Virus record (IMG/VR): IMGVR_UViG_3300045971_000344
Coordinates: 1-64,000 of that record
Reading direction: 5' to 3' (one strand)
DNA: 64,000 nt
Made by a program: the position numbers and the translations under genes. The notes below the pieces were generated by a model. That model was not told the origin of the DNA. It worked only from the letters and a program-made list of their open reading frames with translations, and did not search any database. Positions 7,162-54,324 of this stretch are shown piece by piece. The stretch's first letter is position 1, and the number at the start of each line of letters is the position of its first letter.

Positions 7162-9035
7162 TGATGAAAAAAGATCCGTTAAAGTCAGAGATTAGAAAAT
7201 TGAAGTCCCTACCTCTTGAGTCTCCTTTTGGAGTAATTGATGACCCACCACCATATAAATCAAAAAAGAAACAAAAAGAAACAATCTATATTCCTGAAAA
7301 AACAAGTTCTGATGTTCCCAAAGCAGCAAAATTAGGTCGTCTTCCAAAAGAAGTAGAAAAGATACAAGGTAAGATAGACAATCTGGTAAAGGTTCCTAAA
7401 GAGCAACTTGACCAATTCATGCAGGTCTATACAGATTCTAGCAAGGGTATAGCTAATGACTTTTTGACCCGAATAGCCCCTGTATTTTTATCCTTTGAAG
7501 ATGCAATGAGCTATTCAACCGTAGCTCTAAGGGATTGTTTGTCTTATGATGGTGAGATTGATCTTGAAATACTACCTCTTTTAGAATGGGCGGCACGTAT
7601 CTCTGTACTAGCAACATTTTTAGATAAATTAGGTTTACCTTACGTCTATAAAAAACGGTTTATGCAACTCTCAATAGCAAAGGCTGTTGAAAAAGCATTC
7701 TTAACTAAAAATTCTATGTTGGGGACAACTGTTGGAATCTCCGCACAGAATAGAGTAGCCGGAATAGTAAACACCCCAAATAAGACTACCACCACCCCAA
7801 ATGTTCCACCTGCGGCTATTCGGACACGGAATTTGAATACAAATCGGAAAACAAAATGATCCGCCATCTGCATATTTGTCCCTTACAAGCAGAATTTAAG
7901 TTCTATAATTGCTGTCCAATTCATTCTTGTCTTTATTACAGCAAAAAGTGTTTTTCTTGTTGCATAAAATTAGGTACAAAAGAATCAGATAACGATTCCA
8001 TAGGAATATCTAACTCAGAACTTTTATTCTATAAAGGATCCGATGAAATTAGATCAAGTAAACATATAGCTGATCTTAAAAAAGGGGGAATACTACGCAT
8101 ACAGCAAATTTATGGTTTCAATGCTTATTTAGATTTTATCCGTGAGAACTACTTTGACCTACGGACACATTTTACTCAAAAATTTAGCTTTGGAAGAAAA
8201 TTACGTTCAAAATGTATAAGTAACACCTTAGCTTTATATCCTTATAATGTAGACCTTTTTAAGATAACAAAAGCAGATTTAGTATTAATCTTAACAAATA
8301 ACGTCTATAGTTCATTTGTAAGTAGAAAAAAATTAGATTCAAATATTTTAGACTATTTCTTAATTATACATCTGTCAAAAGAGAGAGTGGAGAAAGTGCG
8401 GGCGGTACTAAAAAACTATTTTAGAAAAAAGGGGATAACACATGATTTCAGCGAAGAAAGCAATAAAGGGATTGGCCTCATTGAAAGTTAGCTCTCTTGA
8501 GGACAAAAGTTTAAAAGAAATTTGGGTCATAAACGAAACAAAGCCAAAAGGAATTATTATTCTTGATATTAAGAATAAAATGGACGGAAGTCCTACTTTG
8601 GTAACTATTCCTCCTACTTGGATTCCTATTTGTTTAACTGATCAGATACCCAAGTCTATGCTTACAGACAGCCCTAAATTCAGGTCGATTTTATCCTTGG
8701 GTCACATTAAGCTCCTTGATCCAAAAGGTGTTCATGAGATAATTGCAATACCTGAGATTGCAGAAGAGATTACTGCAATAAAGAATAAAACATCGGAAAT
8801 GTTTAAGGAACAACTTCCCGAGGCTATAAAGACAGAAGCGATTTCTGTAATTGTCCTGGATATCCTTTCAAGAGAAGAAAGTAAGACAATAACTGAATCT
8901 GAAGCAAAAGACATTTTGAATAACAAAGAAGATGAACTATCCAATGAAGATCTTGAGCACTTAATCAATAATAGTAACATGGCAAAAGTTAAGAAATGGG
9001 CCGCAGAAATGATTACCGATAGAGATTCAGAATAA
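7161..9035 (+). other. Three hypothetical CDS between helicase and primase (7161..7859, 7856..8491, 8442..9035)
   Basis: Overlapping co-oriented ORFs of 197-232 aa. Confidence 0.65.
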
Positions 9036-12565: not shown

Positions 12566-14065
<1,500 letters not shown>

Positions 14066-47384: not shown

Positions 47385-48956
47385 ATGGAAACTACAAAAC
47401 AGAAAATTACGTGGCGTGAAGCAGTTAAACTGGCAAGGGTTCAGAACGTTCAGGCCATAAAAGAGGCAGGGACTATTGTTGTTTCGGATGGACTTTCAAT
47501 TTCGGCAGTATCTATGGGACTCAATAAGTGGGATTATTATAAATCGGGATCCGAGGTGTTCATTACAGAAAGTGATACTCCCGAAGTTGTACCGGCAGTA
47601 GTAGAAGAAAACAAATGGAAGCATATAAATATGCCAACGCTGAACAGTATACTGGAATCTTCCAGAATAGCAGAACCTGAAAAATACGAGGGACTTCGCG
47701 GTAGTTCAGCTTATCGTAGGCTTCGTGATAGCGGTGATGAAATAACTCTCAGGAACGGTATTAAGATACGAAAGATCGTAACCGAAAAGACTGGTACGAA
47801 GTATGAAATGCTTGAACCTGAGCAGGACCTGACAGATCCTATTGTCCAGTTATTTATTGGCACCAATGGGTCTTCTGTTATTCAGACTCCATCCGGTACA
47901 GAGTTGCTGCTCCAGCAGATGGAAGTAATGTTGGAATCAGGGCTCGGAGACCGTGAATATAGAAGCCATGACTTTGATGAAGACAACTATGATGAAGACG
48001 ATGAAGATGAGGATTATGATGGCAATGGGTCTGGTAGACCACCTCGTGCCAAATTATCCTGGTCTAAAGAAGCGCTGATTAAGCGCGCGGCAAATTCAAT
48101 AGTCATAACACCGGATATTTACTTCCAGTTTGTTAAGTCAAAAATGACGGACCTGCAACTGGAAGATCTTACTGATAGACTACGCAAACTCTCAGTGTTG
48201 GTAAAGCAGGCGGACGAGATCGGGCAGACCGCAGTATATGAATCACTTGCACTTCAGATAGCGATAATCGCCAGGGAGCAAGAGGCTGCCTCAATAGGTT
48301 GCGGTAAAAGGATTGACGTTAACACTGTTAAACACTTCATTGGAAAAATAGAGGGCAAAACTATAAAGTTCGATGACTTTGAGAACTTCCCTCGAATCGT
48401 TCCTGTAGAAATCGCTACCCGGATCAAAGCAGTAAGGGAAACAAAAGTGTTTGACAAATATAAAATTGTCTATGTTGACTATACAAAGGAGAAGGTTGAG
48501 ACGAATGAGCAAAAAATAAGGACGAAAGATCCTATCCTGTTTGGGACCTTTGACCACGAACCTCAAAAACTCTATTTTATTATCGACTGGATTGATGAGT
48601 ACTGTGACCTTACATTAGATAAAATGGTTGGTACTCTTTCAGCGCATGACCCCAATTTTGCTCTTGACCAGGTCCCTGACCTTGATAAGGACTTCATTAA
48701 GCGTACACTGGATGATGTGGAAGCGCGCCACTTGAGGCTGAAAAATACCAATTCTCGAAATTATAAACAACTGATGAGAGAAGAAGAGCAGGCAAGAGAA
48801 GACCGAAGAGAAGCTCTTCGAGAGCGTAATGAGCAATTAAGCGCAGAGCTGGCGTCTGTTCCCTTAGTTGAAGAAGGACAGAACATACCTAAAACAGATA
48901 ATGAAGGAAAAAGCTTCTTGAAACGCCTTGCGGCTCTTTTTACCAAAAAGGAGTAG
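47385..48956 (+). CDS. Large hypothetical phage protein
   Basis: 523-aa ORF; C-terminal KDPILFG...YFIIDWIDEYCDLTL block. Confidence 0.7.
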   Translation: METTKQKITWREAVKLARVQNVQAIKEAGTIVVSDGLSISAVSMGLNKWDYYKSGSEVFITESDTPEVVPAVVEENKWKHINMPTLNSILESSRIAEPEKYEGLRGSSAYRRLRDSGDEITLRNGIKIRKIVTEKTGTKYEMLEPEQDLTDPIVQLFIGTNGSSVIQTPSGTELLLQQMEVMLESGLGDREYRSHDFDEDNYDEDDEDEDYDGNGSGRPPRAKLSWSKEALIKRAANSIVITPDIYFQFVKSKMTDLQLEDLTDRLRKLSVLVKQADEIGQTAVYESLALQIAIIAREQEAASIGCGKRIDVNTVKHFIGKIEGKTIKFDDFENFPRIVPVEIATRIKAVRETKVFDKYKIVYVDYTKEKVETNEQKIRTKDPILFGTFDHEPQKLYFIIDWIDEYCDLTLDKMVGTLSAHDPNFALDQVPDLDKDFIKRTLDDVEARHLRLKNTNSRNYKQLMREEEQAREDRREALRERNEQLSAELASVPLVEEGQNIPKTDNEGKSFLKRLAALFTKKE

Positions 48957-51236: not shown

Positions 51237-51324
51237 TCGTCTGTCTGAGTGAAGAGTGTGTATTGGGCGACCCCTGCGTAGTGGAGTGACAGTCGGGAGA
51301 GACCGACTTAGTTACGAATAACTT
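51231..51324 (+). ncRNA. Candidate structured cis-regulatory RNA with K-turn-like tandem GA motif
   Basis: CTGTC/GACAG stem, TGAAG...TGGAG, TGTGTA/TGCGTA stem, AGTCGG/CCGACT hairpin, outer stem next to the SD. Confidence 0.4.
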
Positions 51325-51334
51325 GGAGGTACCC

Positions 51335-52099
51335 ATGGTAGCTAAATTAGTAACCTCAATCTCAGATCGAGAATTGATGGTTAATTTTATCAGACAGGAC
51401 TTTTATAGAGACAAATTTGTATTGGCTTTAATTTCAGGAAACACTGCGGAGTATTCAAGTAAAAGTATACTTCTTTTTGATGATCTAAAAACCTTGAAGG
51501 ACAGTGCAAAAGAAATAAAAAATGTAAATGATAATATGTCATACGTTGCCTATGCGTATGGCATAGAAATCGGGTCTGACAGCTGGATGGATGAAAACAT
51601 AAGCGAAGAAATGCTTAAGTTAAATAAGGCCCCTGTTTGGATTGATATACAAAGAACCGCCACTAAGATACCTGTAATAGGAGTAGGTGGAGGAGCGATG
51701 GCGAATCTGTTCTCTTGTCGCTATGTATTGACTCCAAAGAAAACGCTGAAGCGAGCACTGTTTATTAGACACGCAGGTGACCTTTGCAACTCTAAAAATC
51801 AGGCTTTAGTTCCAGTTATGTGCAATGATCTTATAGTAGATGTTTCTGGAATGAAACCGTTTGATTTAAACAATCCGGACATTACCATTAAGCTTTATCG
51901 GGTAGCAACTATCCATGAAATGAAATTAGAATGTGAAGATGTGTCGGAAAAACTTGATGGGTCCTGTATAATACAAAAAGTAGTGGAAGGTGCCCATACC
52001 TATCATAATAGGGATGGTTCATACTTCTGTTCGGAGTTGAAGGTAAAAAATAAGAAGGAGGGGGTTCCAGAGCAAGACGAAGATACACAACAAGAGTAA
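51335..52099 (+). CDS. Hypothetical protein
   Basis: ORF with GGAGG RBS. Confidence 0.65.
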   Translation: MVAKLVTSISDRELMVNFIRQDFYRDKFVLALISGNTAEYSSKSILLFDDLKTLKDSAKEIKNVNDNMSYVAYAYGIEIGSDSWMDENISEEMLKLNKAPVWIDIQRTATKIPVIGVGGGAMANLFSCRYVLTPKKTLKRALFIRHAGDLCNSKNQALVPVMCNDLIVDVSGMKPFDLNNPDITIKLYRVATIHEMKLECEDVSEKLDGSCIIQKVVEGAHTYHNRDGSYFCSELKVKNKKEGVPEQDEDTQQE

Positions 52100-52206: not shown

Positions 52207-53154
52207 ATGGCAAAAGAAACTAAAGAAGAAAAAGCAGCACGTTTGGCCAAAGAAGCAAAACTCGCAGAGCGCGCCCGTAAGAAGGCTGAAAAAGAAGCCG
52301 CAGCTAAACAGGCCGCCAAAGAAGCAGAGAAGGCTCGCAAGAAGGCTGAGAAGGAAGCAGCTTCTAAAAAGCCTGCGAAAGCTGAAAAGCCTGCTAAGTC
52401 AGAAAAGGCACCCAAAGCAGGTAAAGGTAAGGCAGCGAAAGCAGAAAACAATGCAACTGTTCTGGTCCAGGCACGAACCGTGCGTGAACTCACAGGAACA
52501 ATCGCTTCAATCACCGGCGAAGAGATTCAGCTTATTCACAAAATGCCGAGGTCTTCAAAAGCTGTTCTCCGTACAATCGCTATCGCCGATGTACTGTTCT
52601 TTAAAGGTGAAGAAGGTTCCTACGGTGAAGTTTCTTTCTACGGTAACGAAGTTCTGGTCGATGATAAAGGTATTAGCGGCAAAGACAAGACTACGGGGTT
52701 TGTTACTGTCACTAACAGAAACGGCGAAGTTATCGCCATCAACCCTGATCAGCCAGAAGGTTCTGATTCAGAAATCCTCGTTCTGGTAGACGAAGAGATT
52801 GCAAAGCGTCCTAAGAAAGAAAAGGGCGAAAAAGAAGAGAAATCCGGTAAGGGCCGTAAGGCAAAAGACGAGGACGAAGATGAGGACGAGGACGAGGATG
52901 ATGAAAAACCTAAGCGTGGCCGTAAGCCTGGTAAGCCCGTAGAGGATGATGAGGATGATGAGGATGAAGAAGATGAAGATGATGATGATGAAGATGAGGA
53001 TGAAGATGAGGATGAAGATGATGATGATGAAGATGATGATGATGATGATGAAGACGAAGATGATGAGGATGATGATGAAGATGAGGATGAAGATGAGGAT
53101 GAAGATGAGGATGAAGATGAGGATGAAGATGAAGATGAAGATGATGACGACTAG
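52207..53154 (+). CDS. Protein with Lys/Ala-rich N-terminus, beta-rich core and ~70-residue Asp/Glu tail
   Basis: Translation; GAT/GAG/GAA repeat tract about 52870-53151. Confidence 0.7.
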   Translation: MAKETKEEKAARLAKEAKLAERARKKAEKEAAAKQAAKEAEKARKKAEKEAASKKPAKAEKPAKSEKAPKAGKGKAAKAENNATVLVQARTVRELTGTIASITGEEIQLIHKMPRSSKAVLRTIAIADVLFFKGEEGSYGEVSFYGNEVLVDDKGISGKDKTTGFVTVTNRNGEVIAINPDQPEGSDSEILVLVDEEIAKRPKKEKGEKEEKSGKGRKAKDEDEDEDEDEDDEKPKRGRKPGKPVEDDEDDEDEEDEDDDDEDEDEDEDEDDDDEDDDDDDEDEDDEDDDEDEDEDEDEDEDEDEDEDEDEDDDD

Positions 53155-53209
53155 TCATTAGCTTAATCTGAAGACGAGGATGATGACGAAGAGGAATTTC
53201 ATTTAGCCT

Positions 53210-53490
53210 GAACTTACCAGGTAGTATCTGAGTTATAGTAAGTCAGCTCTTTATCAGAGTTGTCGAGAAGCTCAGGTGCTGTATAGAGACGAAATAGATA
53301 GGACAGTGAAATGTACCACAGTGTTTAAGCCCTTAGCGGCAGTCCCGACCGGTATCCGGTCATTGCCATCCCCCGAATTGAACAGCGTAAGATAGCTGTT
53401 AGTTCTTCGCCCACAGATGTTATGCCATGTGGGCGCCGTCGGCGCGTAGGGAGTCGCTTGCTTTTACACACATCGCCCGGTACAACTAGC
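53210..53490 (+). ncRNA. Structured RNA with collinear similarity to the 16S rRNA head (about nt 976-1240)
   Basis: GAACTTACCAGGT, TCAGAG, CAGGTGCTG, GTGAAATGT, TTAAGCCC, TATCC..TTGCCA, GATG, TACACAC..TACAA in rRNA order and near-rRNA spacing; many hairpins; no ORF. Confidence 0.55.
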
Positions 53491-53494
53491 CGAC

Positions 53495-53593
53495 AAGTTA
53501 TAATTGTCCGTTTAGGATAGTGCGGAGACTATGAAGCTGTGGCGCCAGCAGCGGTGGAGTCACCCTTGAAATACGCACCGGAAATTATAATTT
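53495..53593 (+). ncRNA. 23S rRNA L1-stalk (H76-H78) mimic
   Basis: Ungapped match to recalled E. coli 23S 2113-2178 with compensatory pairs; 15-bp closing stem 53495-53510/53579-53593. Confidence 0.85.
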
Positions 53594-53629
53594 CTATTTC
53601 GTTTTCTAAAATCTTAGGAGTGATGAGCC

Positions 53630-54175
53630 ATGAGAACAAAAACCTTAAAAGTAATAATACGAAATGCCATAGCTATGGCTTCAAGTCCTTTTGAATGTGT
53701 AAAGTATATCGCTCGTGAGTTGGAAGAAAATAATGTAGAGTACTGCGTTATCGGGGGAGTAGCACTTTCAACTTATAACTACGAAAGAAATACTAATGAC
53801 GTAGATCTATTGGTATCTAAAGAAGGCTTTAGTATAATAAAAAATAACTTTATTGGTCGTGGGTATACGCTTAGACCAGGTTCAACAAAAAACCTTAATT
53901 ATTTAGCTCCTTCTGGTAAAGTACCTATTGATATACTTGTAGAGGGAGACCGAGAGGGAACAATTGTTCTACCCAAACCAAAAGGTATACGAGAAAAACG
54001 TGGTGGTATATGGTACTTAACCTTACCCAAACTCATTGAGTTTAAGTTAAACGCTAATAGACCGGAGGACAGACAAGACGTACTGAAATTAATAAAGTTA
54101 AATGACTTGGGTCCCGAATTGGTTCAGGCAATTGAAGGCCCTGCTAGTATAAAATACTTAGAGTTGTTGGGTTGA
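53630..54175 (+). CDS. Minimal nucleotidyltransferase (Pol-beta superfamily)
   Basis: YCVIGGVAL...RNTNDVDLLV...IDIL...LIEFKL..RPEDRQDV. Confidence 0.8.
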   Translation: MRTKTLKVIIRNAIAMASSPFECVKYIARELEENNVEYCVIGGVALSTYNYERNTNDVDLLVSKEGFSIIKNNFIGRGYTLRPGSTKNLNYLAPSGKVPIDILVEGDREGTIVLPKPKGIREKRGGIWYLTLPKLIEFKLNANRPEDRQDVLKLIKLNDLGPELVQAIEGPASIKYLELLG

Positions 54176-54185
54176 TAACGCTAAT

Positions 54186-54272
54186 GGGCGAGTAGTCGAA
54201 TGGCATAGACAAAGGATTTAAAATCCTTGGCCCGTAAGGGAGTGATGGGTTCAAGTCCCTCCTCGCCCACCA
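54186..54272 (+). tRNA. tRNA-Leu (anticodon UAA), CCA encoded
   Basis: GGGCGAG/CTCGCCC acceptor stem, AAGGA-TTTAAAA-TCCTT anticodon arm, long variable arm, GTTCAAGT T-loop, ACCA end. Confidence 0.95.
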
Positions 54273-54295
54273 TAAAATAAATGTCCGTCAAGAAT

Positions 54296-54324
54296 TTGAC
54301 ATTTAATATCAGCTATGTTATAAT
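54296..54324 (+). promoter_or_regulatory. sigma70 consensus promoter
   Basis: TTGACA-17-TATAAT; leader similar to that of the 42661 promoter. Confidence 0.88.

What the first reader, a model, noticed from the sequence alone, without database searches (positions are those of the whole stretch)
53210..53490. Degenerate 16S rRNA head-domain look-alike in a phage intergenic region
Seen, versus the E. coli 16S sequence recalled from memory: GAAC(-)TTACCAGGT 53210 ~ nt 976; TCAGAG 53254 ~ 1010; CAGGTGCTG 53273 = 1045; GTGAAATGT 53306 = 1077; TTAAG(-)CCC 53325 ~ 1090; AGCG 53335 ~ 1105; TATCC 53353 ~ 1116; TTGCCA 53363 ~ 1125; GATG 53416 ~ 1187; AGGG 53448 ~ 1219; TACACAC..TACAA 53465-53485 ~ 1224-1239. 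Order is preserved and offsets stay within roughly 10-15 nt. h33-like (CTGAGTT/AGCTCAG) and h34-like pairings remain possible, h32 and h37 are poor, and new perfect hairpins appear (GACCGG/CCGGTC, GCCCACA/TGTGGGC). Inference: a captured and remodelled rRNA piece acting as a decoy for r-proteins, rRNA nucleases or modifiers, or a decaying relic.
Basis: partly seen in the sequence, partly recalled or inferred. Interest (0 to 1): 0.85.

Follow-up and report, generated by a model that had tools for sequence, protein, structure and literature searches.

The report
Phage copy of ribosomal L1 stalk
The claimed 16S rRNA look-alike is a chance resemblance, but the same spacer of this jumbo phage holds a conserved structured RNA whose 3' part is a complete free-standing copy of the 23S rRNA L1 stalk, the ribosome arm that binds protein uL1 and the elbow of the departing tRNA.

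Summary
The resemblance to the 16S head is at chance level. No SSU model hit appears at E<=10. Local alignment scores equal shuffles. 34% of shuffles do as well once any 16S segment is allowed. Mapped 16S pairs equal shuffles, and the anchors are not conserved in relatives.

The 475-nt spacer (53155-53629) is nevertheless a real structured RNA on the + strand, shared with related uncultivated jumbo phages. Its 3' module (53493-53596) is a full replica of 23S rRNA helices H76-H78, the L1 stalk. Rfam LSU scores 50.2-50.4 bits (E about 2e-14). A model built only from seven phage copies finds E. coli 23S nt 2093-2196 at 84 bits. 18 of 26 pairs covary. The six double-T-loop core bases and the Kt-77/78 G.A pairs are invariant. 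The tRNA-elbow platform pair 2112:2169 covaries.

The most likely function is an off-ribosome L1-stalk head that captures host uL1, and possibly tRNA. This is inferred, not shown. I found no report of such an element.

The parts
53155..53211 (+). Post-stop remnant of the upstream acidic protein's D/E tail. The same frame continues SLA*SEDEDDDEEEFHLA*.
   Evidence: (repeat D1)
53206..53280 (+). Two 5' hairpins (53206-53222 and 53223-53280). Their sequence is not conserved in relatives, which carry other hairpins here.
   Evidence: fold z = -3.8; not conserved in alignment
53289..53298 (+). P0 5' strand (ACGAAATAGA). It pairs with 53593-53602 and closes a domain of about 315 nt.
   Evidence: I2, 10/10 complementary; kept in L021 and L040 with one compensatory change
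53299..53491 (+). Module A, a multi-helix GC-rich domain shared with L021 and L040. Conserved blocks are TCATTGCCATC (53360-53370), GCGCC-GTC-GGCGC (53433-45) and GTAGGGAGTCGC (53446-57). The variable hairpins 53347-61, 53381-400 and 53408-35 are replaced by other hairpins in relatives. No rRNA similarity.
   Evidence: (48 pairs with P0, 89.5% paired vs 37-46% slid, 18 double changes)
53493..53596 (+). Module B, a replica of the 23S rRNA L1 stalk. H76: 53493-53510 with 53579-53596. H77: 53520-24 with 53574-78. H78: 53527-29 and 53536-43 with 53548-55 and 53559-61, with a GCCA loop at 53544-47.
   Evidence: Rfam RF02541 50.2-50.4 bits, E about 2e-14; model R1 99 bits here and 83.9 bits on E. 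coli 23S 2093-2196; covariation
53512..53519 (+). Platform residue (U53512, equivalent to 2112) and T-loop 1 (AGGAUA, 53514-19, equivalent to 2114-2119).
   Evidence: roles from PMC3664808 and PMC5309774
53530..53535 (+). Kt-77/78 kink-turn: a 3-nt variable bulge followed by invariant GAA (G53533 A53534). The partners are G53557 and A53558.
   Evidence: naming it a K-turn rests on established knowledge of Kt-77/78
53567..53571 (+). T-loop 2 (UGAAA, equivalent to 2167-2171). Its apex A53569 (equivalent to 2169) pairs with 53512 to form the tRNA-elbow platform.
53593..53602 (+). P0 3' strand (TCTATTTCGT).
53616..54175 (+). Shine-Dalgarno sequence (53616-20) and the MNT-type nucleotidyltransferase gene (53630-54175). 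This is a neighbour, not part of the RNA: its homologues elsewhere lack the spacer.
54186..54272 (+). tRNA-Leu(UAA). The RNA lies in the phage's tRNA/ncRNA island.

Best explanation
The spacer encodes a stable structured RNA on the + strand. A closing helix P0 encloses module A and a complete, autonomously folding copy of the 23S rRNA L1 stalk (H76-H77-H78). This is shown.

The copy keeps every element that makes the ribosomal stalk head work. [quoted passage not shown] This is shown at sequence and covariation level.

The inferred mechanism is as follows. The RNA is made from the phage's tRNA/ncRNA island and presents an L1-stalk head off the ribosome, which binds free host uL1 with rRNA-grade affinity. 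The RNA would thus act as a uL1 sponge. That would relieve or distort uL1's feedback on the rplK-rplA mRNA and its supply to new 50S subunits. It could also form a small uL1-RNA particle that holds the elbow of deacylated tRNA. The role of module A is unknown.
For: Identity with the L1 stalk:
- Rfam LSU hit at the gathering score and in relative L040.
- Reciprocal hit of the phage-only model R1 on E. coli 23S 2093-2196, 83.9 bits.
- blastn and nhmmer confirm it.

Selection on the fold:
- Seven copies in diverged jumbo-phage contigs. 92% of cells are paired against 36-47% in slid controls. 18 of 26 pairs have double changes, and 0 of 500 shuffles reach this.
- A2114, G2115, A2119, U2167, G2168, A2171, G2133, A2134, G2157 and A2158 are invariant. 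The pair 2112:2169 covaries: U:A in two copies, A:G in five, G:A in E. coli.

Strand and fold:
- The + strand folds at z = -3.9 to -4.4, the - strand at z = -1.4.

Context:
- A tRNA gene lies within 1 kb in 4 of 6 informative loci. One copy sits inside a 19-tRNA array with promoter-like sites just upstream.

Background:
- uL1 binds H76-H78 and binds rRNA more tightly than its mRNA operator (PMC10931766).
- The 2112:2169 pair stacks on tRNA G19-C56 (PMC5309774, PMC3664808).
Against: There are no expression data and no binding data. The host is unknown. The platform pair differs from E. coli's G:A, so tRNA docking may be altered. A benefit to the phage from titrating uL1 is not obvious. Only seven copies were found, and module A exists in three. 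Only 64 kb of the 295-kb genome was checked for a phage uL1 gene (none found).
Confidence: 0.5

Rival explanations
1. It is a tRNA-docking RNA. The stalk head is used as in T-box Stem I and RNase P, as a platform that grips the tRNA elbow without needing uL1. Module A would contact another part of the tRNA, so the RNA would sense, chaperone, protect or sequester phage or host tRNAs.
For: The double T-loop core is invariant and the platform pair covaries. This motif is the universal elbow-docking device (PMC3664808). The RNA is associated with tRNA genes.
Against: The H77/H78 region and the whole H78 arm, which T-box and RNase P lack, are also fully conserved, which points to uL1. No specifier-like or NCCA-pairing element was identified. 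The Rfam T-box and RNase P models give no hit. Four copies have no module A.
Confidence: 0.2
2. It is a cis-acting translational operator. uL1, from host or phage, binds the stalk copy in a 5' leader and represses the gene downstream, as in the rplK-rplA leader.
For: In the window, P0 ends 14 nt before the Shine-Dalgarno sequence of the nucleotidyltransferase gene. In L040 a gene starts 97 nt downstream.
Against: The downstream genes are unrelated, or absent, or are tRNAs. Homologues of the nucleotidyltransferase lack the spacer. Known operators are minimal mimics, not full stalks, and R1 does not hit the rplK leader.
Confidence: 0.1
3. It is a decoy for a factor other than uL1 that recognises the L1 stalk: a host defence nuclease or modifying enzyme, or a stalk-contacting translation factor.
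For: Only the general logic of phage RNA decoys, and the complete preservation of the stalk surface.
Against: I know of no L1-stalk-targeting defence enzyme, and no partner gene is conserved next to the element.
Confidence: 0.1
4. It is a non-functional relic of captured host rDNA or an assembly chimera.
For: It is 65-72% identical to the E. coli stalk.
Against: There are seven independent phage contigs, each carrying only this roughly 100-nt piece and no other rRNA similarity. Stems show compensatory changes while loops are invariant. All copies share H77 pair swaps relative to E. coli.
Confidence: 0.03
5. One reading: 53210-53490 is a remodelled 16S head domain.
For: Two exact 9-mers in collinear order, and a global alignment at z about 3 in the chosen register.
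Against: and non-conservation of the anchors in relatives.
Confidence: 0.01

Closest known systems
23S rRNA L1 stalk (H76-H77-H78, E. coli nt 2093-2196)
   Same: It has the same three helices, the same double T-loop core, the same Kt-77/78, the same GCYA H78 loop and the same 12-nt strand CCUUGRAAUA. It matches the LSU model at the gathering score.
   Different: It is free-standing in a phage genome with no other rRNA sequence around it. H77 pairs 2121:2177 and 2122:2176 are swapped relative to E. coli. The platform pair is U:A or A:G instead of G:A. In three phages it is fused through helix P0 to an unrelated module A.
uL1 autoregulatory mRNA operators (rplK-rplA leader; archaeal L1 operon)
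   Same: These are also RNAs outside the ribosome that imitate the uL1 site of 23S rRNA (PMC10931766).
   Different: They are minimal irregular stem-loops in the leader of the r-protein's own operon. The phage element is the whole stalk, is not next to r-protein genes, and is not matched to the rplK leader by model R1.
[quoted passage not shown]
   Same: It has the same AGNNA...UGNNA core and a stacking platform for the tRNA elbow (PMC3664808, PMC4810234).
   Different: Those modules lack H78 and uL1 binding. No T-box or RNase P model matches here.
T4 small stable RNAs rnaC and rnaD (species 1 and 2) in the tRNA cluster
   Same: They are non-tRNA stable RNAs encoded among phage tRNA genes, with unknown function.
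   Different: There is no sequence or structure similarity: R1 scores at most 10 bits on the T4 region.
Large ornate phage-associated RNAs near tRNA genes (GOLLD, ROOL)
   Same: They are big structured RNAs in phage genomes near tRNAs. This comparison rests on my own knowledge.
   Different: There is no Rfam hit to these families, and they are not rRNA-derived.

Membership tests
16S rRNA 3' major (head) domain | Match to SSU rRNA covariance models | tested here: not met
   No SSU hit at E<=10 on 601, 333 or 296 nt. A real E. coli fragment scores 299 bits.
16S rRNA 3' major (head) domain | Sequence similarity above chance | tested here: not met
   The z of about 3 disappears after correcting for the free choice of 16S segment.
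16S rRNA 3' major (head) domain | Helices h32-h40 preserved | tested here: not met
   27-33 of 78 pairs are kept, against 33-34 in shuffles.
23S rRNA L1 stalk | Match to the LSU covariance model over H76-H78 | tested here: met
   50.2-50.4 bits against a gathering score of 50, E about 2e-14. L040 scores 38.1 bits.
23S rRNA L1 stalk | Reciprocal recognition of a genuine stalk | tested here: met
   Model R1, built from phage copies only, hits E. coli 23S 2093-2196 end to end at 83.9 bits.
23S rRNA L1 stalk | H76, H77 and H78 supported by covariation | tested here: met
   18 of 26 pairs have double changes and 92% of cells are paired.
23S rRNA L1 stalk | Double T-loop core AG..A / UG..A and the 2112:2169 platform pair | tested here: met
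   The core is invariant in all 7 copies. The platform pair covaries but is not G:A.
23S rRNA L1 stalk | Part of a full-length 23S rRNA | tested here: not met
   There is no other LSU similarity in the flanks or in the 136 kb searched. It is a homologue or copy of the domain, not an rRNA gene.
23S rRNA L1 stalk | Binds ribosomal protein uL1 | not testable with these tools
   Needs a binding assay.
uL1 mRNA operator | Lies in the leader of rplK/rplA and is a minimal mimic | tested here: not met
   Neighbouring genes are unrelated to r-proteins. R1 does not hit the rplK leader.
T-box leader | Stem I with specifier plus antiterminator; match to the T-box model | tested here: not met
   No Rfam T-box hit. 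Only the double T-loop module is shared.
T4 rnaC/rnaD | Sequence or structure similarity | tested here: not met

The most novel reading that the evidence does not exclude
A lineage of jumbo phages encodes a working ribosomal domain as a stand-alone gene. This trans-acting L1 stalk would, with captured uL1, form a mini E-site arm off the ribosome. It would be used to manipulate host translation or tRNA traffic, by titrating uL1, holding deacylated tRNAs, or guarding phage tRNAs. That would be the first virus-encoded functional rRNA domain.
Probability: 0.35. Interest if true: 0.9.

Novelty: new variant of a known kind. Interest (0 to 1): 0.78.

Why it matters
Phages are known to carry tRNAs, tmRNA, a few ribosomal proteins and translation factors, but not pieces of rRNA under selection. 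A free-standing, evolutionarily maintained L1 stalk would be a new way for a virus to touch the translation machinery. It also gives a directly testable handle: binding of uL1 and of the tRNA elbow. [quoted passage not shown] On method, whole-window Rfam scans missed it because of speed filters. It surfaced only through homologues and a search of 333 nt or less.

Tried and rejected
- Stop-codon recoding or a hidden ORF in the spacer: all three stop codons occur in every frame.
- Other copies of the element in the window: none.
- Link to the downstream nucleotidyltransferase: its homologues at 49-74% identity have no long upstream spacer.
- tRNA pseudogenes, group I intron, RNase P, tmRNA, riboswitches, GOLLD/ROOL: no Rfam or ARAGORN hit.
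- Homologues by DNA search in GenBank phages: none. A later search with the E. coli stalk and with L040 module B found only host 23S contamination records.
- Pattern scans that returned only chance hits: the metagenome scan, mostly a conserved protein-coding gene; two bacterial hits not confirmed by R1; GC-rich coding sequence.
- The word-indexed protein search with the acidic protein gave nothing.
- Two length coincidences with neighbouring genes of relatives were checked and dismissed.
- My own first reading of module B as a novel riboswitch-like fold with a K-turn was replaced once the LSU hit appeared. The K-turn is Kt-77/78.
- T4 rnaC/rnaD are not related.
- Literature: no report of phage L1-stalk copies. 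The supplementary files of the IMG/VR structured-RNA catalogue (PMC10690425) were not available, so I cannot exclude an unnamed entry there.

Full report
CONTEXT. The window is positions 1-64000 of IMGVR_UViG_3300045971_000344, a 294,944-bp uncultivated jumbo-phage contig. It carries T4-like replication genes: gp32-like SSB, UvsX, Dda, clamp loader, gp46-like. The finding lies in the largest GC-elevated non-coding stretch of the window, 53155-53629 (GC 0.50-0.54 at its core against 0.35-0.45 around it). Upstream is a 315-aa protein with a long D/E tail (52207-53154, phrog_22271). Downstream is a 181-aa MNT-type nucleotidyltransferase (53630-54175), followed by tRNA-Leu(UAA) at 54186-54272.

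THE OBSERVATION. I took the E. coli 16S sequence from NC_000913 rather than from memory. CAGGTGCTG and GTGAAATGT are exact 9-mers at 16S positions 1045 and 1077, and the rest are near the stated positions. So the description is accurate. Its significance is not.
- Local alignment to the whole 16S equals dinucleotide shuffles under three scoring schemes.
- A strict end-to-end alignment to 16S 976-1245 gives z about 3 and beats 1314 window tiles. But the register and ends were picked after the fact. If each shuffle may choose its best 270-nt 16S segment, 51 of 150 reach the observed score, and the real sequence fits 16S 613-883 equally well.
- I read the head-domain pairs off Rfam's structure line on a genuine E. 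coli fragment (299 bits, E 1e-93). Mapped through the alignment, 27-33 of 78 pairs remain pairable, against 33-34 for shuffles.
- Rfam SSU models give no hit at E<=10 with 601, 333 or 296 nt of input.

IS ANYTHING THERE? Yes. The + strand of the spacer folds far better than shuffles: z = -3.9 for 475 nt, z = -4.4 for 53284-53612 with the minimum-energy and centroid structures almost identical, against z = -1.4 for the - strand. A perfect 10-bp long-range helix (P0), 53289-98 with 53593-602, closes the domain. All three stop codons interrupt every frame, so it is not coding or recoded.

FINDING RELATIVES. GenBank phages have no DNA or protein match to the spacer or its two flanking genes. Homologues of the nucleotidyltransferase exist but have short upstream spacers, so the RNA is not tied to that gene. 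The exhaustive protein search with the acidic protein's N-terminal domain gave a 44%-identical protein on contig L021. The DNA downstream of that gene is homologous to the window's spacer. The syntenic gene upstream (51323-52099) led to further relatives: L040, L045 and L048. All have a large non-coding stretch after the acidic-protein gene. Conserved blocks then allowed a gapped pattern scan that added three IMG/VR contigs of 75-205 kb: L050, L051 and L052.

MODULE B. Seven sequences share a module of about 104 nt (window 53493-53596). On a plain MAFFT alignment, RNAalifold predicts four helices. 18 of 26 pairs show changes on both sides. 92% of cells pair, against 36-47% when partners are slid by 1-3 columns. 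No shuffle of 500 reaches any of the five measures. The loops between the helices are invariant. I first read this as a new rod-like RNA with a kink-turn.

ITS IDENTITY. When only 333 nt were given to Rfam, which applies laxer filters, the module matched LSU_rRNA_bacteria at model positions 2105-2240 with 50.4 bits (gathering score 50), E 2e-14. L040 gave 38.1 bits, and a 201-nt search gave 50.2 bits with a full alignment. The reciprocal test is stronger. Model R1, built only from the seven phage sequences, scanned E. coli rrlH without filters and hit nt 2093-2196 end to end at 83.9 bits, E 5e-22. That segment is H76-H77-H78, the L1 stalk. Plain blastn and nhmmer agree: 72-81% identity over 2107-2178. 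They find no other rRNA-like piece in 136 kb of these phages.

FUNCTIONAL NUCLEOTIDES. I aligned the seven copies with E. coli.
- T-loop 1 (2114-2119, AGGAUA) and T-loop 2 (2167-2171, UGRAA) are present in all. [quoted passage not shown]
- The tandem G.A pairs of Kt-77/78 (G2133, A2134 with G2157, A2158) are invariant, behind a 3-nt variable bulge.
- The pair 2112:2169 is the surface that stacks on G19-C56 of the E-site tRNA elbow (PMC5309774). It is G:A in E. coli, U:A in the window and L050, and A:G in the other five, so it is a covarying tertiary pair.
- H77 pairs 2121:2177 and 2122:2176 are swapped relative to E. coli in all seven copies. This shared feature fits one origin.

uL1 binds exactly this H76-H78 head, and binds it more tightly than its own mRNA operator (PMC10931766).

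The span 53210-53490 comprises two 5' hairpins (not conserved in sequence) and module A. Module A is shared by the window, L021 and L040. With P0 it has 48 predicted pairs, 89.5% paired against 37-46% when slid, and 18 pairs with double changes against 3-6. The structure was derived from the same three sequences, so this leans in its favour. Module A has no rRNA similarity. The other four phages have module B without module A. The L1-stalk copy is therefore the portable core, and module A is a lineage-specific addition joined to it by P0.

GENOMIC SETTING. A tRNA gene lies within 1 kb of the module in 4 of 6 informative loci: the window, L048, L051 and L052. In L051 the module sits inside an array of 19 tRNA genes, with sigma-70-like sites just upstream (13 found against 6.5 +/- 2.7 expected). 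Downstream genes differ between loci or are absent. This argues for a trans-acting RNA and against an operator for one gene. R1 does not hit the E. coli rplK leader or T4's rnaC/rnaD. No uL1 homologue is encoded in the phage DNA I held, but that covers only 64 kb of the 295-kb genome.

MECHANISM. Three things are shown: a selected, autonomously folding L1-stalk replica; its preservation of the uL1 site and the elbow platform; and its place in tRNA/ncRNA islands. What follows is inferred. The RNA presents a stalk head off the ribosome and captures host uL1. The possible consequences are loss of uL1's feedback on rplK-rplA, reduced uL1 supply to new 50S subunits, or a small RNP that holds deacylated tRNA by the elbow. 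I rate the uL1-capture reading at about 0.5. The alternatives are a uL1-independent tRNA-docking role at about 0.2, a cis operator at about 0.1, a decoy for another stalk-binding factor at about 0.1, and a relic or artefact at about 0.03.

NOVELTY. Searches of the paper library for the motif strings and for phage L1-stalk or rRNA mimics found nothing relevant. In 50,697 GenBank phage records, the only matches to the E. coli stalk or to a phage copy are host 23S contamination records. A catalogue of about 8,500 unnamed IMG/VR structured-RNA candidates exists (PMC10690425). Its files were not readable here, so an anonymous prior listing cannot be excluded. In kind, this is rRNA mimicry of an r-protein site, which is known from autoregulatory leaders. 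The new features are that it is a complete rRNA domain, virus-encoded, free-standing and conserved.

CAVEATS. There is no expression or binding evidence. R1's E-values are rough because calibration was shortened. There are only seven copies of module B and three of module A. The host is unknown.

Noticed in passing
window 53152-53211: After the TAG stop of the acidic 315-aa gene, the same frame continues SLA*SEDEDDDEEEFHLA*, and the D/E-coding repeat resumes at 53169-53196. This is either a relic of a longer tail or an 18-nt insertion carrying two stops. The L021 homologue is called as two ORFs (191 + 122 aa).
   Followed up: partly
window 47385-48956 (+): A 523-aa ORF hits PHROG 10081 'transposase' over residues 239-447. 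OrfB_IS605/TnpB-like genes also sit near the nucleotidyltransferase homologue in L015. A possible guide RNA at its 3' end was not examined.
   Followed up: no
L045 6644-6944: A group I intron (Rfam 76.9 bits) lies inside what looks like a tRNA-Leu gene, at the position syntenic to the window's spacer, followed by tRNA-Met and tRNA-Arg. L045 has no L1-stalk module in the 9.8 kb fetched.
   Followed up: partly
window 53630-54324: The MNT-type nucleotidyltransferase gene (weak PF14907/PF19502 hits) ends 10 nt before tRNA-Leu(UAA). A perfect 12/12 sigma-70 consensus with an extended -10 follows at 54296-54324.
   Followed up: partly
L050 11985-12100; L052 1-22; L048 about 8330-8360: Further short blocks are shared between relatives around the stalk copy: CCAUUCC..GGUAGGGGU directly 3' of it in L050 and L052, and GGAUGUUUGACGRAGAU in L048 and L050. 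These hint at more modular RNA elements in these islands.
   Followed up: no
window 1-64000 (method): Rfam scans of the whole window, and of 601 nt, did not report the LSU hit. It appears at the gathering score when 333 nt or fewer are searched. Speed filters can hide short rRNA-domain copies.
   Followed up: yes
window 12566-14065: The gp32-like SSB also ends in a long D/E-coding repeat (13349-14025) similar at DNA level to the tail of the 52207-53154 gene.
   Followed up: no
L051 5400-6900 (- strand): Repeated promoter-like units (TTGACA-17-TAAGAT/TACGAT) punctuate the 19-tRNA array, about twice as many as in shuffles.
   Followed up: partly
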